NCBI GenBank assembly: GCA_047495785.1
Contig: JBLDXI010000055.1
Location: 62,001 to 126,000 of the forward strand
DNA from: Lepidodermella squamata
Taxonomy: Eukaryota > Animalia > Gastrotricha
Reading direction: 5' to 3'
DNA: 64,000 bases
Both the position numbers and the translations under genes were made by a program. The first letter of the stretch is position 1. Every line of letters starts with the position of its first letter. The notes below the pieces were generated by a model, which was not told where the DNA came from, made no database searches, and saw only the letters and a list, made by a program, of their open reading frames with translations. Below, piece after piece: positions 28,836 through 57,260 of this stretch.

Positions 28836-30494
28836 ATGAATTTTCCTGTGAGACATACGGAGCTGCATGATTACCTCAAACAGCTTCTTTCAACATTGGT
28901 AAATTCAATTTTTTTATAAGTATTTTACGTTTGAAATTTCGAACTTCCATAGAACGCAATAAAATGTGGATCTGTCTTGCCGGATGCTTTGAAAATCGTA
29001 TTGTGCAATGAAACCTGTGATTTGGACTCAACAGCATGTGCGTTAACCTACGCGTTTTTCCTGCACAAAGTAGGTTTTTTTTGATGTCACAATATATCCA
29101 GTCTAAAGATCTAATTTTTAGTCAAAATCGAATGATCAAACTGTGGTTATACCGGTTTTAAATACTAGTCGAGCTGATTTCCCGTTGCGATCCGATGTCG
29201 TCTCCTTACTGTGCCACTACGAAATCGCGGTTGAATCACTCTTATTTATTGAAGATATTTCATTCGTTCTTGAAAACGAGAAATTGCTCGAAATTCTGCA
29301 AGTCGTGTTAGTTGATCACAACTACCCTTCAGAATGTTGCATGGCATTGATTGAAAAAGTTGTGGAAGTCGTTGACCATCATGAGGAGCTGCCCCATTCT
29401 GTTCCAATGAAAAACTGCCGGCGATCGGTAATAGAAAAAGTCGGCTCTTGCTCAACCTTGGTCGCAGAGCAAATGTCGAAACACGGAGGTGGACGAGGTT
29501 ACGAAAAGAGAAGCGAATCAGGCGACGAGCCTCATTCATACCATATTGATTCGACCAGTGCTGCTCTACTTCTAGGCAAGTTTTATCTGAGCCTTTTTAG
29601 GAATTGCATTTAATAGAAGGCAAACAGATCGAAAATGCAGATAGCCATCAATTCCATATAATAGACCCATTTTAATTCAAATTTTAGCTGCTATTCTTGT
29701 GGATACTGTTTGCGGATCCCCATCTGCTGGTCGCGAAACACCGAAAGATTCTGAAGCGGTTGCGAAACTCGATGAAACTGCCCAGTTGCCGTACAACCAT
29801 GGCCGATTCTACGAATGGCTGTTGTCGGCAAAATGCGATATTTCAAGTAATTTTGTCTTCTTCAGTAAAAATTAGGGTGACTTACACAAATTTCTCTCTT
29901 CAGGGCTTTCGACCGCAGATCTGCTTCGAAAGGATGCGAAGCTGCTCTCGGTTGGAAACACTCGAGTGATGACCTGTTCCTTACCAACTGGTTTCAACTG
30001 TACATCGAATAGAACCGATCTAGCCCAATCTCTAGAACAAGTTCTTATCCGCTCAAACGTTGCCGCCGTGGTTTTACTATGGTACACAAATCCTGCTTTC
30101 CCAGACGATGCTAAGAGAGAGCTTGGGATTTTTTCTGACGACTGCGATTTGCTAATTTCGGTAACAATTTTTTGAAATTATTGAAATTCCATTTCGAAAT
30201 TTCCGATCTTCAAATTAGTTGGCGTCGTGGTTGCAGACTAACAAAAAAGTTGACCTTATGCTTTCGCCGCTGAGTGGCACCAGCAATGGGGTAGCTGAAA
30301 ATGGCCGAGTTGAGTTGCTTTCGAACAATAATTCCCACGACGATAGCGGAACCACGTCGCCTGTCTTTGTGAATTTGATGCTGGGCGACCGAATGATTGC
30401 TTTTTCGCAGGGTAACGTTCGCGCGTCTCGGAAGCAAATTCTACCACTTGTCGAAGAGTTTTTGCGCACTCGCAATGGCAAAACCGATAAATAA
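28836..30494 (+). CDS. PRUNE: Prune exopolyphosphatase (DHH family), multi-exon
   Basis: VLCNETCDLDSTACAL, PVLN..RADFPLRSD, LVDHN, VVDHH, VGSCSTLV, ILVDT, LLRKDAK, QGNVRASRKQILP. Confidence 0.9.
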
Positions 30495-31129: not shown

Positions 31130-34100
31130 ATGGATTCGGCGAGTGATCAAGTTGAACCAGAACAACAACAATCGGATTTGGCAGCCGATAATCCACCTCA
31201 GCCCGATCAGGTCGAATCGGAAAGCCATCAGGAAGCTGCTGTTGGCGATCTACTTTCGCTCAATGATTCTAATCAAGTCGAACAACCCATCGAAACAAAT
31301 AGTGATGAGGCTAAGGACGATTCTGAACAGAATCAAGTCGAGGAAGGTGGGCTGATTGATTTGGGTAATGACCCACAGCCAGAAGCTGAAGCTCAAATAA
31401 ATTCTTCTAACCGCTCGTCATCGAACGACGGACCATCTAATGCGACGGAAACGTCGAAAAGTTCCGAGTCATTTTTTCAAGTTGAAACAGCCGACGGCAA
31501 TCATTTGGAGGACAATTTGGTTTATTTTACCAAAGATACATCCGATGACGCAGTTCATAGTGAAAACAGTGGCGATAAGGAGGCGTTCGAAGAAATCGTC
31601 ACATCTGAGCCTCGCATCGAATCTATGGCTGAATCGATGATTGATCAAGATGCTGCTCCAGAAGAAGCTCAAATCATGAGCTCTGAGCAGGTTGTCGAGG
31701 AATCGAGCAAAGCCTCGGAACAAAACCTTCTCGATATAAATGAAACAGCTGCTGAGCCGGAAATCAAAGAAGTTACTTCAATCGAAGAACAGGAGACGAG
31801 CGTGAATCAGGAACAGCCGTTACTTGATTTGGATAACGACCCGAATGACGATATATCTAATCAAATGGCGCTGGCTGCCGTTTCCGCTGGGCAATCTGGC
31901 CAAACTGTTGAGCCTGTCAGTCTAGAGGACGACATTTCGGTTCAAGAGCCGCCAAACCCGGAAGAGGAGGATTATGTCGCAAAAACAGAGGCCGACGTTG
32001 ATAATTGTTCGGTCGAATTTGAAGAAGACATTGAGCGAGTGGAATCGGCTGAAAATGAGTTCAATATTTCTATGCCGACAGATGAGGTCCCGAGAGAAAT
32101 CAGCCCTGCTGTTAGCTTGAAAGACATAACCGAGGAACCTGCTGAGGAAGAGATCATCGAGCCAGCAGATGAAGTGCAAGATGAAACCGAACCGCGTCAA
32201 GCCGATTTCGACGAACCTGAAGCAGACCCAATCAGCTCTAGCGATAATGAACCCAATCAAGAGGTGGAAGTCGATCAAATTCTAGTACCTGTAGAAGCCG
32301 ATCAAGTTGAAGAAGAGGTCGAAACGAGGCAAGCTGAACCCGAGCCTCAACCCGAGGTTGAAATTCGGGAGCCTGAAACCGATAATCAGAAGCCAGTCGA
32401 GCTTATCGAGGAGACTCTAGACAAAAATGAAGCAGATCCAATTAGCTCTATCGAAAATGAAGCCGAACAAAAGATGGAAGTCGAGCAAATTCTGGAAGTG
32501 GATCAAGTTGAAGAGGTCGAAATAAAGCAAGCTGAACCGGATCCTCAACCCGAGGTTGAAGTTTCGGAACCCGAAGCCGATCATCAGAAGCCGGTCGAGA
32601 TTGTCGAGGAAACTCGGGACGAGCCACATACGGATGAAGCAAATCCAGTGAGCTCTATCGATAATCAAGAACTGGAAGTCGAACAAATTCTAGAAGCTGA
32701 AGAAGAAGTCAAAACAAACCAAACTGAACCCGAGCTTCAAACCGAGGTTGAACTTTCGGAGCCTCAAACCGTTAATCAGTCGCCGGTCGCGCCACATACT
32801 GATGAGGTTGAGTTGGATCAAGTTCCCGATGTTGATACGAAAGATCCAGAAATCGTTGAATTGAAAATCGATGCAAGCCAAGATTTTCAACCTTTTGGAG
32901 AGCCATTCGAGCCGCAAAACATCTCGGATGAGCCCGAGGTCGATTCGGCTCCTATTGATATACAACCAAGTGAAGTCGAAAACACTTTACCGCAAGCTTC
33001 CTCACCTTTATCCATTCCTACTATTTCGATAACTGATGCTGACGAAATTGAGGCTCTGCCGGAAACTGGTGAAACAAATGCTGGTGTGTTCGAAGAAAGC
33101 GCCGAGCAGACGTCAGGTTTCATCGAGTCGCAATTATCAGCTGTCGAAATATCAATCAACGATGAGAAATCTGATGACGAAATCGTGGAAAACGTGCTTC
33201 ACTCGGCCCCATCGCCATCTGATAGTGCAATCGTTGCAACAGATGAAGAGTCAAGAAGTGCAACCAGCCCTGAATCTAACAAAGAGAACACCGCATTTCA
33301 TCACGATTTATCAGACCACGGAGACTCGCAAAATGCCATCGACAGTGATAGTCCTGGCTCTCCGGTCAAAGACGAATGGAGCGAATCAGAAATATCTAAA
33401 ATTGAATCGCAAAACGAATCCGCCGAAGGAGTGAAATCCGAAGTGAACCAAACAGAAGAGCCACGGCCAAACTTAGCGCCCGATGTTACCTCTCAACTAA
33501 ATTCGGCTGTAATTACACCATCCGACGCCGGATTTTCAGTTCGATACAGCGCGGGATCGGAAGACGGTGACATTCCGAATGAAGATGACAAAGATCGATG
33601 GCTGAAGGCTACTATCAAAGGAGCTCCGTTTATGGTCGATCTTAAAGCTATTACGCCGTACAAGAAATTCCTTTCTTTTGGAGGTAAAACCGTTTGATTT
33701 AGTGACTGAAAATGTATAATTTACCTAATTTTCAGGATTTACTGAGAAGAAAGAGTCGATTATAGTTTTAACTGCTGCTTACTTGCCTCTGCCGTCAGAG
33801 CAGAACTACAACTATATAATCCACCATCTCTTCTGCTACGTCACTAGTGCCATTGATCTATTGGCCCCGAATGAATATATTATTGTTTACTTTCACTGTC
33901 ATCGTTCCAGCGGCGACATGCCTCCACTTGCCTTCTGCACGTCTTGCTATAGTCAGCTGGATTTCCGACTTCGAAAGAGTGCTAAATCGTTGTACGTCGT
34001 TCATGCTAACGCTTGGGTGAAAACAGCCTCGGCGTACCTGTATGCATTCAAGTAAGATCTCATAGCTTTCATATCCCTAATAATTTGCAACTGTTCGCAA

Positions 34101-39367: not shown

Positions 39368-42300
39368 ATGAATCCATCGGTTTTAGTGGCCATTGTCTAT
39401 TTCTTCGCCACTCTAGACTTCGTGAACGCAGCTGATGCTTACGGTGAGAGTTAGAAAAATCAGCAAATCAGATCGTCAACATATTTTTTCGATATAGATG
39501 TGTGTCGAGCTGGTCTCACGTCACAAGAAAATCCCTTCACTGAAAGCGACCGGTCGCTGACGATTTTCCTCGACTTGAAATTCAAATGTGACGGTGCTTT
39601 AACTAACATAGAATATTTCAGCGAGCGTTCCGACGGGTCGGTTTTTTACGTCGACGTATGGCGGGCGGGCAGCGGCGAGAATCAGTATATTCTCGTCGGC
39701 TCCATACGCCTGACTGCGGTTTCGTTCGGCCGCCAATCCATCGACGTCGATCTTGATAAGCGTTTCCGCGTTCAGCAAGGTGACATGCTTGGAATACACT
39801 ACGACAGTGGCGGCGATGGTGTTGTGGTGCCCTATTTCACGCCGATGCGCCCTGGCCCCTTCGCCCAGGACCAGTACTCGGACATTGTGACTTTGGGTTA
39901 CTACAACAGCCAAATTTTGTCGACACTTCAAGGCAACCAGTTTATCACCATTCTGCCAATCCAACCGCGATCTCGCATACCCGCGCTGATCGCGACCGTC
40001 TCGCCCGGCAAAGTGCTATTTTCGTGCAATTTTACCGACACCTTGTGCGGAATGGATACTATTGCTGATCCCACTGGTTTCAAGTGGGTCACTGGCCAGG
40101 CGTACCGCGCTCAGCTCAGCCCTGAACAAACCGCAATAGATAACACTATAAAAACGAACCTTGGCTACATGGCTTATACGACTAGCGCATCTGACGTTAG
40201 AAGCGGACGGACAAGTTTGACACGCCGTAGTTTGACATGCCCCAGTTCTGCGACGAATGAGTGCTGCCTCAGCTTCTACGTCATCCTCTACGGAACGGCT
40301 ATTTTAACGGTTAAAATTCGGCGGCAATCAGATCAGATGGCGGAGACGCTTGGCGTTGTAGTCGGGCAAACAGCCGGAAATATGTGGCCCCAAGTTTACA
40401 AAACCTTTTCTTCTACTGGCGGCTTTGATGTAAGTTAAATTTCGATCTTACATTCACTCGAAGAATACGAAAATGTTAAAAAATTAAAGCGAAAAATTGA
40501 TCTTATCGTAATTTTTTTATTTTCGCAGCTCATTTTCGAAGCTGAACGCGGAACCCAAGGGGACTCGACGGCAGCCTTGGACGATGTAGTACTCTCGGAA
40601 GGTCGCTGCCCAACAATTGATGGTAAGAAAATGGCTGGAGATTTTCTAATTAATGCATTAATTTGTTGCCAGATGCTGCTGCAACATGCGGAAACTACTC
40701 ATGCTCATTTGACGACTCAAAGTGCGGTTTTTCGTCTATATCGCAACAAACCGCATTCGAGTGGTCTTGGCAAACCGGCCCGTCGCCAAACCGACCTTCG
40801 AATACCGGCCCTAGCGGTGGTTTGATGAGCCGCGGCGCTTACCTCCTGGCCAGCTCGTTCGGCCGCCTGCCTAACGACAGAGCTCAAATCGCCAGCCGGC
40901 CTCTCGCAATCGGTTGCATGCGCTCCCGCGTGGTCTGTTACACGGTTTCTTTCTACTTCCACATGTACGGACCTCGCGAAGGGCGTCTCAACGTCTACGC
41001 GATGTACAACACGCAGCAAAAGCTTCTCTGGACAACGGCTGGTGACCACGGCGATGGCTGGATTTTCATCGAAACTGACCAACAACCAATCACTGATGTC
41101 CCATTCACGGTTCAAACAATCCGCGTCGTTTTCGAAGCTGTGATCGGCGGCAGCCAGTTTAGCGATATCGCAGTCGATCAAGTTCAAGTAAATTTCCAGG
41201 CTTGCAAATGTAGGTTTTCGAATTTTTCATTTTTTCGTTTGTTTAAACGTTTTCATTGAAAAGCCGTTGAGACGGCGTGTTTCGCCGGACCGGAGTCGAT
41301 CGCTACACCTCCGCGTCAACTCGCCCGGCCGTCGAACCAGCTGACTATTTGCGACTCAATGACCTTCCCATGCGGAGGTCGAGTTCGAGCTTGGGAGGTC
41401 TATTCGACTTATGCGCCATCAACCGTCTTCGCCGCTGCTTTCCGACCAATCGCCGGCGGAAATCGATATCGCCAAGTTGGGCAAAATGTTATAAAGCTGT
41501 CAACTGCTGGTCAGCAATCGGTTAAGATCGAGGACGCTGATCAGTTTGTTGTCCAGCCGGGAGATGGTAAAATTTTTCGCGCTTTCCCGATGAATTAATG
41601 CTAATGATTTATTTAGTGATGGGATTTTACTACGACTCGCGGTTCACTCGTGGCATTCTCGCATTTGACAACTCGAGTGTTGCATCGGTTGGCGCTAACT
41701 GTTGGGAAGCTCCAGTCTGGAAGTCTGACGTAGAACAACTGATGACCACTGACACTTTCGTCGATGTGAATGCCGTAGGCGGAGCTGTGGTGAAACGCCA
41801 ACACTACATCAAGGCATACGTTCTCGGTACCCAAAGCTGTGGAGTTGTGCCTGATATCCTGAACGCCGTGGCTCAGCCTTCGTTCACAGGCCGAACAAGC
41901 GTAGTCGGCGATGCTGTTGTCTACTCATGCTTACCTGGCTTCAACATGGAAGGCCCGTCGACAGTGACTTGCACGTTCGCTGCAACCTGGTCGGAGCTGC
42001 CAGTCTGTGTTGCGACACCGATTTGCGAGGCTGGCCCGCCTAACATCGCCCCGGCCGCTGTTTATTTCACACCAGCTGAACGCTCGTCCTACCTCCACAT
42101 TTGCGCGACCAACTTCGTGCGCTGTGACGGCTTGATCAGCAACTGGCAGTTTTACAGCATTCGAAACGACAATTCGACCGTTTACCTCACTATCTGGCGC
42201 AAGGTTTTCGGAACAAATTTCCAGCTGGTCGGGAAATCTGCAGGTCGAGCTATTCGAGTTGGTCGAGTTCTCATCGACTTGCCGACGAATGACGACCGAA

Positions 42301-45300
42301 TCGCGGTGAAATCTGGCGATGTCCTCGGCATCATGTACCCAACCTCGCAAAGTCAGGCTGTTGTTTCAATTGCTACAGAGAACATGCTGATGGGTTTCTC
42401 CCGGGATGATCTGCATCAATGCTACGTCCAAGCTCTGTTCGATGAAGATGTGGCAAATCGAATGACGATTGATAAATCGGTTCATGTTGATGACATACTC
42501 GAACGACGTATTCTAGCTGTTAAAGCTTCAGTGGATTGTAAGTTTTTGAAAGCTCGGATTAACCTTAAATCATAAATTTTTTTTTACAAAGCTGGAGATC
42601 GATGCCAACCACCGCCGACTATCAGTAATGCAGTCATTCAAAATCAATCGTTCCGCGTGGGTGACATCCCTACGGTCGGTGATAAGGTGGTGTACACCTG
42701 CACTCGTGGTTTTACCATGCTCGGTGGTGATACTATCACTTGTCTATCATCTGGTCGTTGGACCGCCGCCCCGCAGTGCCGTGCCCTTCCAGCTTGCACA
42801 ATCGGCCCGGGCAACGTCTCGCCCGATCCAAGCACCCTAGGCGACCCTGGAACCGCCCTGTTCATCTGCCCAACTAACCGCATCACCTGCCCTGGCGTGA
42901 TTCAAGAATGGCAGTACTATTCGTTGTATGGAACGGGGGCTGCTGTTTACCTCGGCATTTGGAGAAAGCTATCTGAGACCAAGTTCCAGCTGGTCGGATC
43001 CAACATGATTCGACCATCGCAGGCCGGAAAAATGACCTTCGAAGTTCCTGATTTTGACCAGATTACTGTTCAACCTGGCGATATCGTTGGTGTTTTCTAC
43101 GAGGTTGAGTCCCAGGCTGGCGAAATTGCATTTGCAAATGAGTAAGGTCAAAGTTTTTTACATTGAAAATCTCAACAATTATTTTTTCCCAGTGCCTATC
43201 CTGGCGGCTTCCCGCCAAGCGCCTTCTCAGGGCAGCAGTGCATGCTTGCCTCGCTATATAAGAACGACATTTACCGGCAAATGGCGGCAAATTCTTACGT
43301 CTCGATTCAACCAGATCGAGTCGATCAGCGAATTGCTGCTCTGAGTGCCGTGGTCAGATGTAAGTCCGAAAATTTCTGACATCTCCCTAGAGGTTGTGGT
43401 TACATAGGAAACTAACTCAAAATCGGTGGTGGTGGTGGTTAGAGTGATTTTTAAATTTATAAGTTAAGGGGGATGCCGTTGTGTTTTTCCAAGCTGATGA
43501 TGTTTATTCTGTTCGACAACGACGAGCAGCTATCGGCACGTGTGGACCTGCACCGAGCGTGTTGAACGCCGCTGCCGAAGCGTCATTCGACAGCTTCCAA
43601 TCAACCCCAGGCGACTACGTCACATACACCTGCGCGTCGGGCTTCATCATGACGGGCAACATGACATCTCGCTGCAATCCTTCCGGACGCTGGACCGAAC
43701 TGCCGGTATGTGCTGAATTGCCGCGATGCACTCTCGGGTCGTACAACATTCCTGATCTACCGACCGGGCTCGCGCGGCCTGGTAACTGGCTTAACATCTG
43801 CTTGAAGCATTCGCTCACCTGTTCGGGCCAAATCAGCCGCTGGCAGCTGCTGAGCTTGGGCGAGTCCATTGTCTACGCCTCGGTCTGGCGCCGGGTTGGC
43901 GAAGGCGAATACGCCTTGGTCGGGTACAATCGGTTGAACATTTCTCGAGCGGGTCTTCTTACTATGTTTGTCGAGCCGGAGGAGCGAATCTTCGTGAGAG
44001 CTGGTGACTTACTCGGCATTTTCTACGACGACCCTGAGGCGATTGGTGCCATCCCGTATGCCGACCCGCAAAACCTGGGCCCTGTGCCGGTTTCGAACCT
44101 CGACACCTGTCTATCAGCCGCGTACTACCTACCTGAACTGACTCATTACATTTCAATCAACCGATACATCCGTTTTGCTACTGATTCCAAGCCATTTAAC
44201 CGGCGTTTCATGTTGAAGGCTTTTGTTAAGGACGATCAAGGCTGTGGCCCTGTTCCGACTGTAGCCAACGCCCAGTCTGAACACCAGATCTGGAACAGAA
44301 CGAGCCAGTTCGGAGATGTCGCTGTATTCCACTGTGTATCTGGCTATTCGATGGTTGGCGATGCGGCGGTTACTTGTAGCCAGACTGAAGGCCGGTGGAC
44401 TGATGCGCCCAAGTGCATTGAGAAGCCACTTTGCTCCATTGGACCGAAGCAACTGTCTCCGTCGTTGGGCAACGGCGATTTATCAACCTCATTCATTATG
44501 TGCCCTACTTTGACCTTCACGTGTGCTGGCGAGGTTGCGGAATGGGAAATCTACTCGGTTCGCGACGATGGAACAACTGGCTACGTCAGTGTTTGGCGAA
44601 GGTAATTTGATTCACCTTTTCAAAATTTTGCTATTTTTTTACTATTATCCATCCATTTTTCTTTATTTTTTCCGCAGGGTTAACTCCGGGTTCCAACTAG
44701 TTGGGTTTAATAGACTCACTGCTAACCGCATTGGCGTAGTACGCCAAGCCATCCGTCCTTCGGAGAGGATTCAAGTTCAAGCTGGAGACTTTTTGGGTAC
44801 CTTGATTTTTATTAAAAGTGTGAAAGATTTATTTATTTATCTGCTTGTGGCTTTTTTCAGCAATTTTCTACGAGGACCAGACGGTTCCGGCGATTATTCC
44901 ATGGGCTACATCGAATAACCTCGGTGGTTTCACGCGCAACAGCCTGGTCGACTGCAACGTGGCCGACGTATACCAGTCTGGCTTATTGCCATTCGCCTTG
45001 CCTAACACTCGAACCTTCCAAGTCTCGGGCTCAATTTCACGCCGATTGCCCGCTATTCGTGGCTTCATTTACGGGACGGGTGGCTGCGGACCGGTGCCGT
45101 CGTTAGACAATGGCGTTGTCTATATGAGCACCAGCAGCACCCCGAATCAAAGTGTTGTCAACGACTATGCGAAATATCAATGCAACTCGGGTTTCGGTAT
45201 GAAATAACTGATCTCAGAGGACATTTTCTTAATTTTTATTACAGTGCTTTACGGCCCTGAAATCGTTTCTTGCCTCGCATCTGGACGTTGGTCGGCGCCA

Positions 45301-48300
45301 CCCGCTTGTCTGAGCCCTGAAGCCTGCATGGCCGGTGCGCGTACTATTCGAGCTCCTAGTCAAGGTCTCGTCATCGACAAAAATTACATGGCTCTTTGCC
45401 CGGCTGCTGTTTTCCGCTGCCCTGGCGTTCTTGATGTTTGGGAATTTTTCAAGTGAGGCTTTTATTTTCATCGCCACACATGCTGTGTGTGTGTGTAGTC
45501 GCCATAGTATTTTTATGCTAGATAACGTAGTAATAGCATTGTGTGAGCGTCGTTTATTGATTATGTGCAGTAGTTTTTCATGTGCGCGCGTGCTCTTATA
45601 AAGCTCGTATATGAGTCGTATGTTGGCTGGAGGTCGTGGCAGGCCTCTGTAACTCAGCGACTTGAGAGCCGGGCTTGCCGAATGGCTGGCCGGTGGGAGT
45701 CCTGTCTCTGGATGTCACATGTCGATCGAGCGCCCCGTGTAAGTACGCCATCAACATGGTCGGTGCGGCGGAGGCCGTACTGCCCAGGTTGTGTAATGAC
45801 ACGTCAAAGGTCAGGTCCTAACGGAAGCAGCCTAACGATGTGCGTGGTGAGCGGTACCGGGACAGTGCTTGTGAATGTGTGCCTTAGGCAGCCCATCGGT
45901 TCAGATGGACGCAAATCTTTTTCATTTTTTATTTTTTATTTTTTTTATATCACCCATTGAAACTTGTAGCCACAACATTTATAGTATCTTGTGACTTATT
46001 TACCTTTTTTATTTTTTATTTTTATTTTTTTTTATAGCGTGCTGGGTGGAGCTAATTCAGTCTATCTGAGTGTATGGCGTCGCCGGTCTATGAATGAATT
46101 TGTCTTGATCGGAGCTCATCTGGTGACAAGCGTCGATGCTGGGCACAATCTGTTCATGCCGCCCGGCAAGCAACGGATCGTTGTTGAAGCGGGCGATTTC
46201 ATCGGCTTCTTCTACGAGCTGGAAACTTCTGCCGGTGTGATGACTTACGCCGACTCGACTCACCTGGGCGGGGCTTCACCGGTCGACCTAATGACTGACT
46301 GCATCACAGCTCCGTTATACAAGGCTCAAATCTACCAGCAAATGTCAATTCGGGGCTCAGTTCTTATTGACGGCGGCAGCAAAGCCAACCGCCTTTACAG
46401 CCTTCGTGCCTACGTCAAGTCAGAATCTGTTTGCGGCTCGATTCCTCACGTCGACTACGCCACTTCGTTCTACGCGGCTGCTGGACGGCCAATCAGGATC
46501 AATGACACCGTTGAATACTCGTGTGATGTCAATCGATTCCTGATAGGCCAGGCAAACATCACTTGCACGGCTGAGAACGGCTGGACCCAAGAGCCATCTT
46601 GCATCGAAAGTCCGACTTGCTATGCCGGTTCTAATTTGAACCCGCTTAGAAAGGAGGATTTTCTAGTGAATTCAACGACTACGAATGTAAGAGATAAACT
46701 TCTATCAAATTAAGCTTACTTATTGTATTTTCCACAGTTGACTATTTGTCCGAGCGAAGTATTCTCATGCCTGGGCGATGTCTATGGCTGGGAGGTTTAC
46801 TCGTTGGTCGATGATAACAGCCCGATATTCGCCGGCGTTTTCCGACCTGGAGTCGACTCGGATAACAAAACCTTCGAAGTTGTTGGCTACATGCGAGGAA
46901 GTGCGACGAAGATCGGGCGAGTTTACATCGATTCTTCACCTTCGATCTCAACTCGAAAACCTATCCGCGTCAGACCAGGGTAAGAAAGTATATACCGCAA
47001 TTGGGGCATGCTAAATATTTTTTATATCAGCGACTTCATTGGTATTTTCTATGATTACCGCTGGTCGGTTCCAACTGTTGCCACGGTTAATCCGATCGAA
47101 CAAGTCAATATTTCGGCCTGTCCCGAGCAGAATGTGTCGACTACAACAACAATGTTCCCCGTCATTCCGCCTGAGACAACGACAATAAATTGGAGTAATT
47201 ATCTACCTTAATTTTTAATTAATTTTTAATTTCTTTGTTTTAGTGAAATTGAGATCAGCAAATGACTCGGCCGTTCCCAAGCCTTGCGCGGTGAATGATA
47301 CGCACGTTAAAGCCGGTAGTGAGATGATCACTCGTCGAGAATTCGATGCGCTGGTTCAAGAACTTGAAGAGCGATTCACCGGCGATGTCCTCGTCAACTG
47401 TATCACAGCACAAGTCTACCGGTCTTCTATCGATAACGTCTTGTCAAGCGGCATAAACACGTTGCTATCACTACCGCAAGGTGTAATGACTCGCCGACTA
47501 CTTCGAGTCCGCGCTTTTGTCAAAGGCGTACCAGCTTGCCCTGCTCCGCCTAAGATTCGAAGCGGTGTGTTGGTGCCGAGTTTCACCCGACCAACTGCTG
47601 AACCGGGTGACACTGTCGTTCTACGCTGTGCTAGCGGCCTTCGCATTCGCGGCAATCCAGTCATTTCGTGTCTATCCACCGGGAAATGGTCGTCGCCTCT
47701 GCCAAGTTGCGAGCCTGTTCCAACCCCAGCCCCGCGATGCCTTCGAAGCTCTCTGCCATCAGATGTGAGAATAGCTAACTTTATTTTTTAATTTTCTAAT
47801 TTTTTTATTATTAGAATGGTATTCCGAAACTGCTTGTGATGCCGTTGTTTGTCGGCAGTCAGGCGGAACCTGGAGATGCGGCCGAGTTTGCGTGCGCTGA
47901 TTCGTACTATCTCATCGGCCCGTCAAACACGACGTGTCTACCGAACGGCTCGTGGTCTGCACCGCCCTCCTGTTCGGCGACCAGACCCCCGACCACCTGC
48001 GGCCCGCCACCGCCGACCGTCGAACACGCGGTTGTAGTCGAAACCACTCTGGACAATCCTAACTCAATGAAACCCGCCAACGCCGCTGGTGTCGAGGGCG
48101 ACATTGTCGTCTACCGATGCCGCCCTGGCTATGTGATGCGCGGTAATTCCACAGTGCGTTGCCAGCCCTCGTCAGCCTGGTCTCAGCCGCCGGTCTGCGT
48201 TATTGAAACTGGAAGCTGTGGCGATGTTCCAAGCGTTGATAACGCTCGAGCATTGCCCTCGTTCTATTTCCGCCCTAGTCGCATCGGGGATGTTGTCTAC

Positions 48301-51300
48301 TACTCGTGCTTCAACGGCTTCCGTATGCTGGGTAACGCGACTATCAATTGCTTGACTTCGAAAAAATGGTCACGACTGCCGAGCTGTCAACCGTCTGAAA
48401 TCCGGCCGTGTGGCGACCCGCCTCAACTTCGCAACGGATACGTCGTTTCTATGTCGTACCCGAGCAGTCGTCAGGGCGGCGCGGCGGCCAATGATTCAGT
48501 GCAATACAAATGCGCGAGAAATTACCAGTTGATCGGCAATAACCGGGTTACCTGCCTCGGCACTGGGGACTGGACAGATCTACCGACCTGTGGCCCTGTT
48601 CAGAATCAGCAGCAACAGCAGCCGGGCAACCGAGACGTCGCGCAACCCGAGCGTAATTCATGTGGGGCCAGCCCACCGATTCCGAACTCAATCGCAACCC
48701 CGTCATTCACCGGATCCGCTTCGGTCATAGGTGACTCAGTTACCTATGATTGCAAGCCGGGTTACACTTTAAGCGGCCCCGCTTCGATTTATTGTACTGT
48801 TGATCTGGTGTGGAGCGATAATCCGGGTTGTAAGCCTATCAGAGGAAGGTCGAAGCGTTCTGCCGATGACATGACCGGCCGTATGGCTAGTACCTGCGGC
48901 TACCCGCCAGTCGTAGAAAACGCTGAACCAACTGCTTCATACGCTGACGACGCTCGAATGCTTTACCAAAGTGAACCGTTTGACACGGTAGTTTTCAGAT
49001 GCAAAAAAGGACATTTAGTTGGAAGTGCGGTTATCTACTGCCGGGAAGATGGGTCGTGGAGTGGGAAGCCGTCCTGTGCCGTAATGACCCCTCATGCGAG
49101 ACAACGAAACCAGGGTAGAAATTCCTCGGCTCCGGCCAAATCTTGCGGACGGCCTCCTCAGGTCGACAACGCATTCGCTCGGCCGAGCTTCACAGGATCA
49201 AGCAGTATCGTCGGCGACTCAGTTGTTTACCAATGCTCGAACGGGTATACCCTTGAAGGGTACCCGATCGTGTATTGCCTGGATTCAAACTGGTGGTCAC
49301 CCAGCCCATCTTGCCGCGATACCAGCGATTCCCCGCAAAATCAGCAAAACAGTTTTGCCCCTGTTGGCGTCCAGCCGCCACCGCACGGCCACCATGGCCA
49401 TCACGGCCCCCCGAATTACCCGTATCCACCATACCCGTGGGGTGTACCAGCCATGCCAGTTATGCCAGTCATGACTGTCATGCCTCAACCTTTGCCGTTC
49501 GGCTGCGGTCTACCGCCTTCACGGCCTAACACCGTACTGCTAACCCCGACTAAACCCGCCTACCCGGGTGATGCTGCTTTGTTTTCTTGCGACTACGGCT
49601 ATCAAATGGTCGGCGAACCGCTGATTCAGTGCCAATGCTCTCAGCCCATGCAGGGTAGCTGCCAATGGTCACCCGTCGCCCCGATTTGCCACCTCGCCCC
49701 GGGTGATCCGAAGAGCCCGAATTTCGTCAACAACATGGCTGGTATCACGACGACTTCAACCAGCACTACCACGACTACTACACCAGCGTCATGCAACTAC
49801 ATCCCTCAAATCGAGAATGGCAGTTGCAACGTTTCGACTGGCAATGATTTCGCGCTGGTTGGCGAACGAGCGATTTGCGAGTGCAACAAGGGCTACGAGA
49901 TGGCTGGTGCTCGGGACATCTACTGTCAGCGGAATAAGCAATGGACTCCGCCTCCGATTTGCCTGCTGATCACCACAACAAGGTCGACGACAACAGCCAG
50001 GACGACGACTACTCCGAAGATATCGATTAATCAAGCTGGAGCCACGACTACAACGCCTAGGATGCAATCATCGACGGCACCATCTTGCGCTCCTGCCCCG
50101 ATTTGCCAGCAGGCATATGTCCCGTGCTGTGGTGCTCAGACTACCTCATGCGGACCTGCCCCGTTCATCCCGGGCGCAGTCTGTCTGACCCCGTTCACGC
50201 AGCAGACCAGCCCAGTCGGTGCCCAGGCGTCATACTACTGCCAGTCGTCCGGCCAGGTCGTACTCAGCACCTGCCAAGGCAATGGTGGGGGCTGCCAATG
50301 GACGCAGCCTTCTTGTTCTGGCGGCGGTGGCGGCGGTGGGCCGATGATGTTGGCGCCGGGCCAGGGTGTCCAGCCCTACATGTTCGGTCGTAAACGGCGT
50401 GATGTCAACCTAGCTATTTCAAAGGCAGCCAGCAAGTTCATGACAAACTCTACCTGCGGCTTGCCACCAAAAGTTCACTTTGCCGTCGGCGTCTTATCTT
50501 GGGGTGGCCGGCCTAGCCGACCGAAAGATAGCGTCGTTTTCCGATGCATTCGAGGCGAACTTCGAGGACCGATCGCTGCATTCTGCCGTGAAGGTTTGTA
50601 GCCAAAGTTTCACCTGAAAAATGTTTTAAATTTATCTTTATGATCTATAGATGGACGCTGGACAAACGCTCCGTCTTGCAGTGTTGAGTTGACGTCGCAT
50701 GGAATTGGACCAGCATCTACCCCGGCAACTCCCAAAGGCCGTGCCGCTGTGAAACAGTCGAATCGGGGTCCGATGGACGCTGGCCAATGCGGTGACCCGC
50801 CATCGGTTGAAAATGCCTACAGCATGCCGAGCTTTACCGGCGGTCGGGCGGCTGAAACTGGCGATCGCGTTATCTTCTCATGCATGCAGGGTTCATTCTT
50901 AGAGGGCAATTCGGTCATTGTCTGCCAATCTGATGGGTAAAAATTTTGAAATTGCAAATGAATTGATTTTACGATTAAGATTTGTTCAGAACCTGGACGG
51001 CAGCTCCGCAGTGTACGAATACCACAAACACTCCGCCGAATAATAATAATAACCCGAACAATAACCCGAACGGTAACCCGAACGGAAATTCGTGCGGACC
51101 GGCGCCATATGTCGAAAATGCTCAGATCTATCCTTCCTGGGCAGCTAATCAGCGCGAATCTCAGACGGGTGATAGTGTCACCTATCGCTGCGATGATGGC
51201 TATTCCAGAAACGGCTATGCGACCATCTATTGCTTGGCTAACGGTCTGTGGCCGAACGCGCCTGTTTGCGACTACGACCCGAATAGCGCTACGAATAACA

Positions 51301-54300
51301 ACAACAACCCTCCGGCTGGAGCTAAGCCAAAGGCATCCTGCGGCCCGGCTCCAATCATTGCCAATGCGGCTGCGATCCCATCATTCAACCGAGGTTTCAG
51401 CATGGAAGGTGATACGGTTACCTTTCAATGCCAGAATGGTTACAACATGCGTGGTGCGGCGACAATTTACTGCTCGGTATTGGGACAGTGGTCGACGCCG
51501 GCGACTTGCGATGGTGAATTTTCAATGCTTTGATTCATTCGATTTGATTGATTTTTCATTTTTACAGCCAATCCACCTGCCACTCCCACAATTGGAAGCT
51601 GCGGCCCAGCGCCTCGCCTGCCCCATGCTGCCCTAACTACCAGCTTTACCCAGCAACAGAGCAGTGTCGGTGATACTGCGACTTATACCTGTGATAACGG
51701 CTACGTTCTCGAGGGCCCTAGCACGATTTTCTGTGTCGCCCGTGGTTACTGGAGCCCACTTCCAGCCTGTCGCGAGAACCCGACCGCAGCCCCGAAACCA
51801 GCACCCGCTCCCAATCCGAACCCAACGCCTACGAAAACTTGCCCTGAACCACCATTCCTTGTCGACGGCGAGTATTTCAAGGGTTTCACGGGAAATGCCA
51901 CTTCAGGGGCAGTCGTGTATTACCGATGCAATTCCGGGTTCAAGTTATCCGGATCGGACCAGAGCATTTGCACTGATACTGGTATATGGCGATCTGTCAA
52001 CGGCGCTCCTTACTGCACGAAACAGCCTAGTCCTAACCAACCGCCGCCACAGCCAACGTCAATGGCTGGAACTAACGGATGCTTCCCGCCTCCTGAGGTG
52101 ATGAACGGGCAAGCAATTCGTTACTACACGAAGGATCCGCCACAACCCGGGTCGTATGTCGTATACGAATGTGACACTGGTTACCAGATCAGTGGATCCC
52201 CGTCGATTGTTTGCCAGGCTGATTTCACGTGGTCGCCAACGCCTCGCTGTCTCTCCGCGACTCCAAGTTCGCTGACATGCGGCGAGCCGCCTCAGATTCC
52301 CAACGCTAAAGCGGATAAATTTTACAGCGGAACTCGATCAGCCCCAGGTGACTACGTCGCTTATGACTGCACGACTGGTTACGAGCTGCAGGGTGTTCCA
52401 ACCTCTGTCTGCCAGGACACTGGTGACTGGAGCCGCCCACCCGTCTGCCAGCTTGTTTCCTGCGGCGCCGCTCCGGCTACGATTAACGGCGTCATCGCCG
52501 GGCAGACCTTCATCAACCCGAACAGTCGAACTGGCGACCAGGTTCAGTACAAATGCGTCGCTGGCTACATGATGCCGGCTGGTGCGGATTCGATGATCAC
52601 GTGCCAGACTGGCGGCCAATGGAGCCCAGTGCCGCTTTGTATTCCAGAGCCTACGACACCTAGGCCAAGAACTACGCGAACTTCTACAACAAACTCTCGT
52701 AAATTCTAGGATTTTCTTTCGATTTCGAGATTTTTTTAATTTATTTTTTTGTAGCAGCAACTTGCGGCCAACCTCCAGCGGTTGCGAATGCTGTGACGGT
52801 TCCGTTATTCTCGGGTAGCCAGAGTCGCATTGGCGATTCAGTGTCGTACCAGTGCCAGACGCCCAAGTACGAAATGGTCGGGTATCCAGTTATTTACTGT
52901 CTCAGCAACGGAAAATGGTCCCCAACTCCGACATGCCAATGGCACCACCACCACCCGCCAATTGGCATGCCATTCCCGCCACCTCCACCGCCGCCACCAC
53001 CACCGCCTATGATGCAGCAAGCCCCGCCTCGCCCAGCCCTCACCTGCCCCATGCCACCATCTGTCCTAAACGGAAATATCCTGCCGACGAAACAGCCCAA
53101 CTTTGTTACGTTCAGGTGCTTCGATGGTTTCCGCCTAGCCGGAACTCCATTCGCGGTTTGCGAATGCACGACCTCCGACAACGTCTGCATGTGGACACCG
53201 GCGCCGAAATGTGAGGAGGTCAACATCACGACTACGCTGGCGCCTGGAAAGTCGCCTAACGTTCAGGTTAACCAAGCTGCCGTAACGTCAACTACCACGA
53301 CGGTTGCGCCGCCAACCTGCGGCCCGGCGCCGATGATTGCCTTCGGTTCTTGCATGATTGTTCCGCCGGATTTCGACGACACCACCAGCGATAACACAAC
53401 TACTCAAGCGCCGGTTCAGCGGGCTCCGCAGTTGTTGGCTCAGAAGGGCGATCGAGCTCATTGCCAGTGCTACAGCAACTACGACTTGCAAGGACCGCCG
53501 AACGTTTACTGCCAGAGCGAGTGAGTTTTTGGTCTAGTTTTAAGGCGGATTTATATTACTAATCTTTTTCGCAGTTTGACTTGGAGTATTGCGCCAAAAT
53601 GTATCAGCCAAGTTTCGGCGCGTGCCTATCGTGTTTCAACCTCGACAACAACGCAAGCAACTACTCCCAACCTGCAAATCAACGGTAAATCCAGCGAATC
53701 TTTTTGATTTGAAGTTTAATTAGATTTTTATAGCTGCCTCTGGACCGAATAGTGGAACTGCTGGTTGCGGACCCGCTCCAATTGTTCCATTTGGTTACAT
53801 CGTAACGCCCTACTTCACATCAGCCAGCTATTTCGGCGCAGTTGCCTCTTACGTTTGCCAACCTGGCTTCCAGCTGAGTGGGCCATCGCCAGTCGCTTAC
53901 TGCCTTCAGAACGGCTTCTGGTCTACCCCACCTGTTTGCTGCAATCCAATTATGCCTGTTTTGATGTGCTCAGGCGGTAATCAAATGACAACAACTGTAA
54001 TAACTAGCACAACTACGAAACTTGCTATACAAAACTTGGCTGCTGTGACGACAACTGGAACTGTCAAAACTACAACAACAGCGAAAGCTGCGATGGCGAA
54101 CCAGCAGGGTTCAGCTACTACGACGACTGCGAGATCTACGAACGCAACTCGGGCGATTCAGCCCGCCAATGCTGCTGGCCCGTGTTCGCAAGCTGCAACT
54201 ACGACCAGTACTTTGCCGCCTTGCGCTACGACTCCGACTACGACGGCTCAGTCGCCTTGCTCCGGGACAACGCCATCGGCTGGTTGCAGGCAGCAGCAGC

Positions 54301-57260
54301 AGCAACAGCAGGCGACCGGGGTTCCTGCCGGGTTTGCCTCAACAACACCGGGGCTGAGGCGAACTACTATAAGCTCGGATTCGCTCTGTTTGAATTCGTC
54401 AGATAGAAGGCCGTGTCGCGGTAGCCAAATCGCGAAGGCGTGGCGAACCGTTTTCCCGCTAGCCTGGTTTTCGGTCCCAGCTGCCGCCCCTCGCCAGTCC
54501 AATCACGAGAACAATGCTGCCGAGTCCGGCCGTTCGAACCCGAGCGGCTTTGCCGGGTTCTGTTGCGGCCGGCCGCCTATTGTCAACTACGCCACGCCAG
54601 TTGACCTTGAACCGATTCTGCACGACGACTTTGTGGTCAAGACTATAGCTAGTCATGTCCACGGTTTAACCCGGGCCGATTCTAAGACGCAACGCCGCTT
54701 GTCGGCCTTACTGCACGACAGCAAAGCAGCAGAGCGTAGCAAACAATGTAAGTCTAGAAAATCATATAAGATTACCGATGTAATATCTTGACTTTTTTCT
54801 AGCTGCTCCTAAGATTTACTGCGTTGGTGACTCAATCTCATACATCTGTGACGAGGTGAGTGTCTTTTATTCTGATTTTGAAAAGTAATAGTTTTCAAAT
54901 TTTCAGGGCATGGAATTAACTGGCCCGGCCATTGTCTCTTGTCTCATGTCTGGTCGGTGGTCTTTGATGCCTACCTGCCAACCTATCTCTAGCAGTGGCT
55001 TCGACGAGAGCCGCCAAGGATTTAGCGACGTTGACATGGTACTCCGAAACGGTAATGAATTCGTATTTTTTTGCTCGATCCTGTTTCAATTTTTTATTTT
55101 TAGATGTGCAAAATGACGACCGTACTCCACCTCGTGATTCATGCGGCGGGGCGCCTCCGACCGTTTTGAACGGTGTTGTGGTTGACCAGTCCTTCAAAGA
55201 CCGGTTCAGCCGCATTGGCGATACGGCGACGTACGACTGCGAGCCAGGTTTCCGCATGGAGGGCTACAAAACCGTATTCTGCCTGTCGCATGACAAATGG
55301 TCGCCGCTGCCTGTCTGCGAGCGAGATTTGCCTCTATGCAGCGCAACGCCGCCTCATGTGCCCCATTCGAAGGTTACGATCACGCGTGCAGCTGGTAGCA
55401 CGAATAAAACTGCGACCAAAGTCGGCGACAGTGCGACTTATGTTTGCGACCCGGGCTTCGTCTTAGACGGACATCCAGTTTCTTACTGCTTGGCAAACGG
55501 CGAATGGACCCCGCCACCAGATTGCGACGGTTAGTTATTCAATTAAGAATTTTTAAAGGAGGATTTATGTTCATCTTTTATACAGAACTCGCTTGCTCGG
55601 AACCGAAGTTGGAAAAAGGTTCCGTTAACTTCGAATCTCTCGCCATCGGCTCTTCAGCGTTTTTCTCTTGCGACGAAGACTACGAGCTGGTCGGTCCATC
55701 GACAGCTAATTGCCTGCAGAATGCCACGTGGACAGCGTTCCCCAAGTGCGCCGGACCTTTCCGTTGCCGATGGGGAGGCCGAGTGCCTGGCGCAGATGGC
55801 CGCGAAATCAGTATCGATGCGAAAAATACTACGCCTGATAAACATCAAAAACTGCCGAGTGGCTCGTTGGCAATTTTCACGTCGTTGCCTCTTCAATGCT
55901 CGGGTTTGATCAAAAAGTGGAATTTATGGAACGCCGCGGCTGGCAACGTGGTGGTTTACGCTGACGTCTGGCGCTTCGCAAACTCAAGCAATGAATCAGA
56001 AGATCCGGAACAGCCTGGCGAGATGTTCGTACTCATCGGCAGCAACAGGCTTGCTCTGGAGTCTCCAGGCGCGCAATCTATCGCGATCGAGCCGGGTTTC
56101 CAGGTGTTCGCTGAGGTCGGTGATTTCGTTGGAATTCGGTACGAACGCAGCGCATCACAGCAGAACCTCCCAGCCGCGATATCGCTGATACCTAGCTCTG
56201 GTCAGCAGGTCCTTATTAGCAACGTTTACCCATCTACCTTTATGGTCAACACTGGCTATTCGTTTGGAGCAAGTGCTTCGTACAAAACAGGCATTCCATT
56301 GCTATCGGCTGTTGTGGAAGATGGTTAGTTTTCAGAAAAGATTTGATAGATTTAAAGTGACCATTTTTTTATTGCAGTTCAAGAGTTACCTTACGGCCCT
56401 TGCGTTGCTAACAAAACCCGCTGCCCGGCTAATGCGGAATGTATGGCCCGGAGCTGCGCTGGGTTTGGCTGTGTCTGCACTGAAGGATATTGGCCGAACG
56501 GAAACCGAACAAAATGCTTGCGAGCCGTTGAACTCGGCGAGCAATGCACTTCGGGCGACGTTGCCTGCTCAGGCTACAACGTCCAATGCTCGGCGGAAAC
56601 TGGCCGATGCGCGTGCTGGGACGACTGGGTGCCGGCTAAAGACGGCCGTCGCTGCGTTCGCCGCTTGGCCAACTCAGCTGAACCGCAGGCTTTGCTCAAT
56701 GAAACTTGCACGCTGACCTCCGCGCGGGCGTGCTATTTCGGCCGCTTCGACCAGGAGTGCGCGAAGGGCGGCGACTCGGAGCTGCGATGCAGGTGCCGTA
56801 GCGGCTATAGGCCTGCGTCATCGACGGAGCGGCGCGCCTTCCCAGATGACGGCTTTGAATGCCGCCCTAATAGCTACAACCTCGGTGAGTTCTTACATAT
56901 TTCATGAGTCATTTCTTTAACGGCTTTAACAATAATTTAGCCACCTCCCCAACTGACAGCAGCTGCTCTTCGGAGGAGGGCCAAACTGGAGCTCTAACGT
57001 CCAACTTGTATGGCGTCGAGCGGTATTTAGAGAATATGGTTGGGTCTAATGGTGGCCTCGTCGGCGTGTTGGCAATGATATGCGTAATTGCGGCAGTTGG
57101 CACACTGATAATTGTAGCAATGGTTCGGCATCAAAGGCGGTTGGCGAGGAAAAAGTCGCGCCTATTTGTCGCAGTGCCATCGAACCCGACGCAACAGATG
57201 CGGCTGCGCCCGATCGCCGTTATCAGCAATCAGCGCCGAGACTTGTCATCAGCTCATTGA
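39368..57260 (+). CDS. Giant type I membrane protein (~5000+ aa): signal peptide, 9 unassigned repeat domains, 2 MAM, ~34 sushi/CCP, Thr/Pro-rich linkers, ~3 EB/EGF-like Cys modules, TM, short tail
   Basis: Signal MNPSVLVAIVYFFATLDFVNA; MAM motifs (SCNFTDTLCG..CLSFY; CSFDDSKCG..SFYFHMYG..IAVDQV); repeated CGxxP..GD.V.Y.C..G..L.G...I.C...G.WS..P.C; the introns I checked keep the frame through to TM GLVGVLAMICVIAAVGTLIIVAMV-RHQRR and stop 57258-57260. The single-gene model is inferred. Confidence 0.82.
45625..45922 (+). ncRNA. SRP RNA (7SL), copy 2, inside intron 45453-46037 of the giant gene
   Basis: About 96% identical to 4462-4760 (12 substitutions counted by eye); same helix 6 and helix 8 motifs; TATAAA ~28 nt upstream; T5 terminator. 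Confidence 0.92.

What the first reader, a model, noticed from the sequence alone, without database searches (positions are those of the whole stretch)
39498..56330. Nine copies of an unassigned ~150 aa extracellular domain, alternating with sushi domains in a giant receptor
Seen: a unit recurs at about 39501, 41278, 42023, 42794, 43727, 44432, 45325, 46618 and 55765. Consensus: C-x-x-G...C-x(4-5)-[FIL]-x-C-x-G-x-[IV]-x-x-W-[QE]-x-Y-S...[VF]Y-x-x-[VI]W-R...[FY]-x-L-[VI]-G-x-N...R-I-x-V-x-x-G-D-x-[LI]-G-[IF]-x-Y...R-x(3-4)-[LVI]-[KR]-A-x-V. Copies 2-8 alternate strictly 1:1 with single CCP domains. I cannot match the unit to a named family; the pattern suggests an all-beta jelly-roll. Inference: a binding module (glycan, pathogen or matrix) displayed on CCP spacers. 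The architecture X-MAM-MAM-(X-CCP)7-CCP27-X-EB3-TM matches no receptor I know (not CSMD, SVEP1, furrowed or CR1).
Basis: partly seen in the sequence, partly recalled or inferred. Interest (0 to 1): 0.75.

Follow-up and report, generated by a model that had tools for sequence, protein, structure and literature searches.

The report
Unnamed lectin-like domain in giant sushi receptor
An invertebrate gene encodes a giant cell-surface protein carrying nine copies of a real ~170-residue beta-sandwich domain that Pfam does not model; the domain occurs in many invertebrates, a choanoflagellate and some bacteria, is shaped like bacterial and phage sugar-binding modules, and so probably binds glycans or another outside ligand.

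Summary
A profile built from 17 copies finds exactly nine copies of the unit (X) on the + strand between 39.5 and 56.3 kb. The six copies not used to build it score E 1e-15 to 1e-37.

- **Sequence assignment:** X matches no Pfam, PHROG or PDB sequence model.
- **Distribution:** X is not rare. This genome has at least 108 hits, mostly next to sushi. There are 1275 protein clusters elsewhere, from molluscs, annelid, nemertean, echinoderm, hemichordates, a choanoflagellate and bacteria, nearly all "uncharacterized".
- **DUF4082 link:** weak hits in a constant register hint at a distant tie to Pfam DUF4082, but this is not proven.
- **Orthologues:** a related species keeps each copy at 64-88% identity.

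Best reading: a CSMD-like giant receptor in which a lectin-like module replaces CUB. The ligand is unknown. The scan already reported this domain in another gene of this genome (s1-430886).

The parts
39368..39443 (+). Exon 1: start codon and predicted signal peptide (about 20 hydrophobic residues). A GT donor follows, and the phase fits the acceptor at 39497/39498.
   Evidence: Reading of the sequence
39498..40000 (+). X copy 1, in a single exon. It lacks two of the four usual cysteines.
   Evidence: X HMM E 1e-50. The orthologue P0026 is 86% identical.
40025..41208 (+). Two MAM domains, at 40025-40414 (continuing in the next exon) and at 40702-41208.
   Evidence: Pfam PF00629, E 6e-9 and 5.5e-22
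41269..47710 (+). Seven X-CCP pairs. X2 is 41269-41565 + 41616-41822, X3 is 42012-42533, X4 is 42789-43142 + 43233-43355, and X5 is 43718-44230. X6 is 44423-44602 + 44655-44798 + 44860-45069, X7 is 45316-45450 + 46030-46419, and X8 is about 46618-46713 + 46735-46980 + 47032-47118 + 47369-47524 with an insert. Each X is followed by one sushi domain, for example at 41838-42008, 43547-43711, 44240-44419, 46432-46602 and 47537-47710.
   Evidence: X HMM, Pfam Sushi, CCP regex. The orthologues P0002, P0003 and P0028 splice the same exons.
47836..55740 (+). A run of about 27 sushi/CCP domains, interrupted by Pro-, Thr-, Gln- and Asn-rich linkers. It includes a possible mucin-like Thr-rich stretch at about 53950-54400.
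   Evidence: Pfam Sushi gave 9+1+2+4+1+2+1 stretches. The regex found 23 CCPs intact in one exon, and about 4 more are split by introns, counted by eye.
55765..56328 (+). X copy 9, the most divergent, next to the membrane.
   Evidence: X HMM E 1e-16 over 55825-56172. It is collinear with the last X of homologue P0006.
56443..56907 (+). Cys-rich EB/EGF-like region.
   Evidence: Pfam EB PF01683, 26.6 bits against a cut-off of 24.3, one stretch. P0006 has EB in the same place.
57051..57260 (+). Transmembrane helix (about 57051-57125), a basic stop-transfer sequence, a cytoplasmic tail of about 45 residues and the stop codon.
   Evidence: Reading of the translation

Best explanation
**The gene.** The region most likely encodes one giant type I membrane protein of an invertebrate. 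Its order is signal peptide, X, MAM, MAM, (X-CCP)x7, about 27 CCPs, X, EB-like region, TM and a short tail.

**The domain.** X is a genuine, independently folding extracellular domain of about 170 residues. It has up to four cysteines, probably forming two disulfides, and a beta-sandwich fold with one short helix. X belongs to a large unnamed family found in many invertebrate phyla, a choanoflagellate and some bacteria.

**The fold.** It is the fold of the Cwp84 'lectin-like' domain, of the CBM-like domain fused to SGNH carbohydrate and polymer esterases, and of phage tail-fibre, receptor-binding and capsid-decoration domains.

**How it probably works (inferred).**
- Each X is a ligand-binding head, most probably for a glycan or other polymer on a cell surface, matrix or microbe.
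- The interleaved CCPs hold the heads apart as semi-rigid spacers.
- The long CCP and mucin-like stalk projects the array far from the membrane.
- Binding would therefore be multivalent, and the short tail suggests adhesion, capture or co-receptor function rather than enzymatic signalling.

**Design.** The plan is that of CSMD proteins (CUB-sushi alternation, sushi run, TM, short tail) with X in place of CUB.

**Shown versus inferred.**
- Shown: the copies, domain order, fold class, family size and spread, and orthologue conservation.
- Inferred: a single transcript, disulfides, glycan ligand and multivalency.
For: **The copies and the gene**
- Nine copies are found; the six not used to build the model score E 1e-15 to 1e-37.
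- Exon 1 carries a signal peptide and the last exon a TM segment.
- MAM, Sushi and EB are confirmed by Pfam.

**The fold**
- The AF2 model has pLDDT 92.3 and pTM 0.88.
- In PbeAcXE the CBM-like domain supplies Arg25, Asn26 and Arg139 to the bound sugar (PMC9105624).
- The phi812 leg domain is read as a possible receptor-binding site (PMC13433997).

**Bacterial relatives**
- The bacterial sequence relative P0124 joins an SGNH/GDSL esterase to X. This is the same partnership seen in the structural neighbours.

**Context in other animals**
- X sits among glycan-binding or adhesive modules: WSC in polycystin-1-like; F5/8C, SUEL lectin and VWD in Patiria; C-type lectin, ApeC, CUB and Kringle in astacin mosaics; PAN; SEA in mollusc perlecan.

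**Conservation**
- Orthologous copies in a related species are 64-88% identical, while paralogous copies within the gene are 25-38% identical. Each copy is therefore kept individually.
- A distant homologue, P0006, carries CCP-X...X-EB-TM-tail in one ORF.

**Other**
- The ESM Atlas's nearest named clusters are Lectin_like, PHR and DUF4082.
Against: - No ligand, expression or transcript data exist.
- The residues conserved across the family (Cys, Gly, Trp44, Trp61-Arg62, Asp101, Tyr107 in HMM numbering) lie in strands and may be purely structural. No sugar- or Ca-binding motif was recognised.
- The AcXE authors note that their CBM-like domain has no canonical binding pocket.
- CUB, the analogous module in CSMD, binds proteins, so a protein ligand is as plausible.
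- One-gene status rests on collinearity only. The orthologue predictions (P0002, P0003, P0026, P0028) are fragments.
Confidence: 0.5

Rival explanations
1. X is a protein-protein interaction module, like CUB in CSMD, complement and Sez6 proteins. The receptor would then bind protein ligands such as complement-like factors, matrix proteins or a homophilic partner, not glycans.
For: - The layout is the CSMD plan with X where CUB sits.
- CCP-rich proteins usually take part in protein recognition (established knowledge).
- Each copy is individually conserved between species but highly diverged from its neighbours. This suits distinct protein partners.
- No conserved sugar-binding motif was found.
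Against: The nearest folds and the bacterial relatives sit in carbohydrate, polymer or cell-surface binding contexts. The co-occurring domains in other animals are largely lectin-type.
Confidence: 0.28
2. The X-CCP genes are a diversified non-self recognition repertoire (immune pattern recognition or allorecognition). The gene in the window would be one member.
For: - This genome has at least 108 X hits, clustered on contigs C15, C19, C55, C21, C32 and C13, mostly with sushi.
- The fold is shared with phage receptor-binding proteins.
- In other animals X occurs together with ApeC, C-type lectin and SUEL lectin, all known immune lectin modules.
Against: Orthologous copies are well conserved, at 64-88% identity and similar to the flanking CCP and MAM domains. 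This is not the pattern of a fast-evolving recognition locus. No polymorphism or expression data are available.
Confidence: 0.15
3. The 18-kb stretch holds two or more adjacent genes rather than one receptor. One possibility is an X-MAM-(X-CCP)n secreted protein plus a CCP-X-EB-TM protein.
For: - There is no transcript evidence.
- The low-complexity stretch at about 53.5-54.9 kb has unclear exon structure.
- Public gene predictions for the orthologue are all fragments.
- P0006 shows that a shorter CCP-X...EB-TM protein can exist on its own.
Against: - Coding is continuous on the + strand, with only short introns.
- Only one signal-peptide exon was noted (39368), and only one TM segment (57051). 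I did not scan systematically for internal ones.
- GC content is raised across the stretch from 40 to 56 kb.
Confidence: 0.15

Closest known systems
CSMD1/2/3 (CUB and sushi multiple domains proteins)
   Same: Both are giant type I membrane proteins. A roughly 110-170-residue beta-sandwich module alternates 1:1 with single sushi domains, followed by a long run of tandem sushi domains, one TM and a short cytoplasmic tail.
   Different: The alternating module here is X, not CUB, and Pfam finds no CUB. This gene also has two MAM domains, a membrane-proximal X and an EB-like region. There are seven alternations rather than fourteen, and about 27 trailing sushi domains rather than about 15. The CSMD numbers are from my own knowledge.
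[quoted passage not shown]
   Different: There is no detectable sequence match. The PDB profile search returned nothing at E<=10, and PF18560 has no hit in this genome. X adds an N-terminal Cys loop, disulfides and an N-glycosylation sequon, and sits in animal extracellular mosaics.
Pfam DUF4082 (PF13313)
   Same: Weak matches occur in a constant register, with the X core from 'C.G.I..W.FY' to 'GD..G..Y' aligned to DUF4082 positions of about 22-125.
- The only PF13313 hit in the 121-Mb genome falls on an X copy (E 0.077, 19.1 bits; E 0.001 as a single protein).
- 4 of 93 homologues hit it, the best at E 1.2e-5.
- P0143 scores E 0.004 and P0102 E 0.03.
- The ESM Atlas lists DUF4082 among the nearest named clusters.
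   Different: - Every score I could read (four of the hits) is below the curated cut-off of 28.4 bits; the bit score of the best hit (E 1.2e-5) is not shown.
- hhalign against 14 cyanobacterial DUF4082 domains gives only E 0.02-0.12 and probability 0.5-2.3%.
- DUF4082 itself has no known function.
Selectins
   Same: A lectin-type head is displayed on a CCP stalk, with one TM and a short tail.
   Different: The head is not a C-type lectin and no EGF module follows it. There are nine heads, interleaved with the stalk, rather than one at the tip.

Membership tests
Sushi/CCP-containing membrane protein | Pfam PF00084 matches above the cut-off, plus a TM segment | tested here: met
   Sushi matches from E 1e-5 to 3e-71 in many exons. 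About 34 CCPs in all. TM at 57051.
MAM domain proteins | PF00629 above 26.4 bits | tested here: met
   36.3 and 78.7 bits
CSMD family | CUB domains alternating with sushi | tested here: not met
   No CUB match in any exon at E<=0.1. The alternating module is X.
CSMD family | Alternating block, then a tandem sushi run, TM and a short tail | tested here: met
Pfam DUF4082 (PF13313) | HMM score at or above the gathering cut-off of 28.4 bits | tested here: not met
   The best score on an X copy of this genome is 19.1-19.5 bits. Homologues P0143 and P0102 score 17.6 and 14.7 bits. None of the 17 A1 members hits it at E<=10.
Pfam DUF4082 (PF13313) | Significant profile-profile similarity, indicating a shared superfamily | tested here: inconclusive
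   hhalign gives E 0.12 at 0.5% probability, and E 0.021 at 2.3% over 65 columns with a 171-sequence X alignment. The register is the same as in the HMMER hits.
Cwp84 Lectin_like (PF18560) / esterase CBM-like fold group | Sequence match to PF18560 | tested here: not met
   No hit in the own genome at E<=1, and none for A1 members.
Cwp84 Lectin_like (PF18560) / esterase CBM-like fold group | Same three-dimensional fold over most of the domain | tested here: met
Lectin / carbohydrate-binding module (functional class) | Demonstrated or motif-predicted sugar binding | not testable with these tools
Selectins | N-terminal C-type lectin domain plus EGF | tested here: not met
   No Lectin_C or EGF match in the gene.

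The most novel reading that the evidence does not exclude
X-CCP proteins are an undescribed, lineage-expanded class of surface recognition receptors. Their binding heads descend from the same ancient module that bacteria fuse to polysaccharide esterases and that phages use in tail fibres. The animal would deploy dozens of differently tuned heads (at least 108 X copies in at least 15 loci) to read glycan patterns on microbes, food or conspecific cells. That would be a new family of pattern- or allo-recognition receptors reaching back to the choanoflagellate-animal ancestor.
Probability: 0.15. Interest if true: 0.75.

Novelty: new variant of a known kind. Interest (0 to 1): 0.45.

Why it matters
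**An unmodelled domain.** Pfam (2025 copy) has no model for this extracellular domain, and my paper searches found no description. Yet it occurs in more than a thousand protein clusters from at least six animal phyla, a choanoflagellate and bacteria. It sits in well-known proteins such as mollusc perlecan and hemichordate polycystin-1-like. Defining it would improve annotation of many 'uncharacterized' invertebrate surface proteins.

**A lead to function.** The structural tie to bacterial and phage binding modules gives a testable lead to ligands.

**Domain shuffling.** The CSMD-like plan with a different head shows that the 'module-sushi alternation plus sushi stalk' design arose more than once, or tolerates module replacement.

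**Scale.** This is an incremental discovery of a new domain family and a new mosaic architecture. It is not a new principle.

Tried and rejected
**Searches that found nothing**
- Pfam scans of every exon and of 17 X copies up to E 10 gave no consistent family. SPRY hit 2 of 17 at E 0.003, which I take as chance.
- PHROGs gave only single weak hits.
- A PDB sequence-profile search gave 0 hits at E<=10.
- The word-index protein search with A1 scored nothing. It is limited to proteins of 97-308 aa.
- Foldseek against PDB gave nothing below E 1e-3. VIA-align was needed to find the fold group.
- PF18560 has no hit in the own genome.

**Dead ends**
- I tried the phage Bxb1 route to obtain DUF4082 sequences, but gp29 and gp25 carry no DUF4082 by Pfam.
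- The search for related loci with A1 failed because no stretch was conserved enough. With P0129 it found no relatives.
- hhalign of X against cyanobacterial DUF4082 was inconclusive.
I therefore had no orthologue DNA, no dN/dS and no species name for the ENA orthologues.
- Paper searches for DUF4082, PF18560, sushi with novel or uncharacterized domains, and the esterase and Cwp84 names found no description of the animal domain.

**Readings rejected**
- ApeC, NIDO, CUB, F5/8C, LamG and PHR membership are rejected, as there are no Pfam hits.
- A chance repeat or pseudogene is rejected. The frames are intact, orthologues are conserved and the fold is confident.

All searches were exon by exon, by reference.
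- The organism was not identified. It is not human.


Full report
**What the region is.** The window is G000:C55:62001-126000 of a 121-Mb, 151-contig eukaryotic assembly. From 40 to 56 kb the GC content rises from about 43% to 50-56%. The + strand there carries a dense series of open exon-sized frames separated by short introns. Nothing suggests a human contig. The neighbours are ordinary animal genes: two ANF-receptor/7TM-like ORFs, RRM proteins and a DHH protein. Every search used single exons by reference.

**Checking the observation.**
- Two copies of the unit lie whole in one exon, at window 42009-42536 and 43712-44251. They match each other at BLASTP E 2e-18 and 28% identity.
- I aligned 17 single-exon copies, three from this gene and 14 from paralogous loci of the same genome, to give alignment A1.
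- An HMM built from A1, run on all six-frame pieces of the window, finds nine copies.
- The six copies not used in the model score E 1e-15 to 1e-37 for their largest exon.
- The only other hits in the window are weak ones at 28938-29018 on the minus strand (E 7e-4) and at 6751-6891 (E 0.43). I take both as chance.
They also hold in a 75-domain alignment of homologues from other organisms.

**Anatomy of the gene.**
- An ATG at 39368 opens a short exon encoding a hydrophobic signal-peptide-like segment. Its GT donor and phase fit the acceptor just before 39498, where X1 begins.
- Pfam confirms two MAM domains after X1, a sushi domain after each of X2 to X8, and many further sushi domains.
- A CCP signature search finds six of the seven interleaved CCPs and 23 of the trailing ones intact in single exons. 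By eye I count one more interleaved CCP and about four more trailing CCPs split by introns.
- After X9 comes a Cys-rich region with one Pfam EB match (26.6 bits against a cut-off of 24.3). Then come a TM helix, a basic stop-transfer sequence and a tail of about 45 residues ending at 57260.
- The stated architecture therefore holds at the domain level. Pfam supports one EB module rather than three, and no transcript proves that it is a single gene.

**Support from other species.**
- Four public protein predictions (P0002, P0003, P0026, P0028) are fragments of the orthologous gene of a related species. They splice the same exons and are 61-79% identical in tblastn.
- Per domain, X copies are 64-88% identical to their orthologous copy, and CCP and MAM domains are 70-91% identical. 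Copies within the gene share only 25-38%.
- The duplications are therefore old, and each copy is kept by selection.
- A more distant protein, P0006 (1442 aa in one ORF), reads CCPs, several X, X, EB, TM and tail. Its last 345 residues before the TM align collinearly with window 55705-56877 (E 4e-34). The membrane-proximal X-EB-TM unit is thus a conserved arrangement.

**Is X a known family by sequence? No.**
- Pfam finds nothing at E<=0.1 on the exons.
- Pfam finds nothing consistent at E<=10 on 17 copies.
- PHROGs finds nothing.
- A profile search of all PDB chain sequences finds nothing at E<=10.
- The 30 nearest ESM Atlas clusters are 'hypothetical protein' clusters, the top three from Porifera or Annelida. 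None of the 30 has a Pfam family.

- a PBCV-1 capsid protein (8h2i_bG)
- a cyanophage A4 capsid protein (9jwb_Z)
- the mycobacteriophage Douge central fibre gp20 and the Bxb1 tail tip
- the phi812 baseplate protein
- the Cwp84 lectin-like domain (4ci7, 4d59)
- the N-terminal CBM-like domain of the SGNH acetyl-xylan esterases PbeAcXE and CspAcXE
- a PVA esterase

In PbeAcXE the CBM-like domain contributes Arg25, Asn26 and Arg139 to the bound MeGlcA-Xyl. The authors note, however, that it lacks a canonical CBM pocket (PMC9105624). The phi812 'leg' domain is read as a possible receptor-binding site (PMC13433997).

**How widespread is X?**
- In this genome a single copy finds at least 108 exon-level matches on more than ten contigs. 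Big clusters lie on C15, C19 and C55, and the sampled paralogous ORFs again combine X with sushi.
- A profile search of 1.84 billion cluster representatives finds 1275 clusters at E<=1e-3 and 211 at E<=1e-10.
- Of 30 clusters looked up, the named ones come from these organisms:
  - hemichordates (Ptychodera and Glandiceps 'polycystin-1-like')
  - a starfish (Patiria)
  - gastropods (Bulinus 'perlecan', Physella, Babylonia, Haliotis)
  - a nemertean (Tubulanus)
  - an annelid (Owenia)
  - a choanoflagellate (EukProt UC4)
  - bacteria (Candidatus Entotheonella LamG protein, a PEP-CTERM protein, an SGNH-lipase protein)
- Almost all are labelled uncharacterized.
- Partner domains include WSC, PKD and REJ; F5/8C, SUEL lectin and VWD; astacin, ApeC, CUB, Kringle and C-type lectin; PAN; SEA; and LDLa, Ig and laminin.
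- X is thus a mobile extracellular module, usually found among adhesive or lectin-type domains.
- The bacterial versions cover only the core (HMM positions of about 20-127) and lack the cysteines.
- I did not see a vertebrate among the names, but only 30 clusters were looked up.

**A possible tie to DUF4082.**
- The Atlas listed DUF4082 among the nearest named clusters.
- Searching the whole 121-Mb genome with PF13313 gives a single hit, and it lies on an X copy (C55:515683-515934, E 0.077, 19.1 bits; E 0.001 as a lone protein).
- Four of 93 homologues hit DUF4082, the best at E 1.2e-5. P0143 (E 0.004) and P0102 (E 0.03) align in the same register.
- I fetched 14 true DUF4082 domains from cyanobacteria and ran profile-profile comparisons. 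They gave E 0.12 and E 0.021 over 65 columns, again in the same register but with probabilities of only 0.5-2.3%.
- Every score I could read is below Pfam's cut-off; the bit score of the best hit is not shown. I therefore record a plausible distant relationship, not membership. DUF4082 has no known function in any case.

**Interpretation.**
- *Shown:* X is a real, confidently folding, individually conserved domain of a large unnamed family. Its fold class is that of bacterial and phage surface-binding modules. The gene's domain order is as stated.
- *Inferred:* the heads bind an extracellular polymer, most likely a glycan. The CCPs space them, and the long CCP and mucin-like stalk projects them. 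The protein would work by multivalent binding in adhesion or recognition.
- *Design analogue:* the closest is CSMD, with X replacing CUB. That analogy equally allows protein ligands, which is my main rival reading.
- *Repertoire reading:* the genome-wide expansion makes an immune or allorecognition repertoire conceivable. The good orthologue conservation argues against rapid diversification of this particular gene.

Finding s1-430886 reports 13 copies of the same kind of domain in another gene of this genome. It reached the same reading, an unnamed lectin-like beta-sandwich with no Pfam model. My results on this gene agree. They add the taxonomic spread, the bacterial relatives, the specific fold group, the DUF4082 test and the CSMD parallel.

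**Limits.**
- The organism remains unidentified.

Noticed in passing
G000 contigs C15:4.984-5.041 Mb, C19:0.853-0.875 Mb, 2.476-2.498 Mb, 2.829-2.833 Mb, 3.239-3.250 Mb and 3.431-3.443 Mb, C55:146-150 kb and 515-530 kb (loci L002-L013): Large clusters of further X-domain exons lie here, giving at least 108 hits in the genome. The sampled ORFs again combine X with sushi; one 877-aa exon has three X and four sushi domains. The X-CCP design is a gene family, not a single gene.
   Followed up: partly
P0065 / L015 (Candidatus Entotheonella), L016 (Trichormus), P0129 (PEP-CTERM protein), P0124 (SGNH lipase + X): Cysteine-free bacterial relatives of the X core exist. They are fused to LamG, SGNH esterase or a PEP-CTERM anchor. 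One host, Entotheonella, is a sponge symbiont. The direction of any transfer between bacteria and animals was not examined.
   Followed up: partly
P0102, P0113, P0127 (gastropod perlecan-like proteins): In gastropods X appears near the N-terminus of proteins annotated as perlecan. It directly follows a clear SEA domain in Physella P0127, with only a weak SEA match in P0102. This sub-family has its own motif (NNWANL..NNAFPC.GKV.AWEYYR).
   Followed up: no
window 5014-7074 (-) and 11383-13806 (+): Two long single-exon ORFs have an ANF_receptor ligand-binding region followed by multiple hydrophobic segments. They look like class-C GPCR-like receptors, diverged from each other.
   Followed up: partly
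window 28938-29018 (-): An isolated weak match to the X profile (E 7e-4, HMM positions 38-64) lies next to a DHH-domain gene. It is probably chance.
   Followed up: no
window 53950-54800 (+): A Thr-, Ala- and Gln-rich low-complexity frame sits inside the CCP run. It may be a mucin-like O-glycosylated spacer or intronic. The exon structure here is the least certain part of the gene.
   Followed up: no
window 31130-33697 (+): An 855-aa ORF is extremely rich in Glu, Asp, Gln and Pro, contains internal repeats and has no Pfam match.
   Followed up: no
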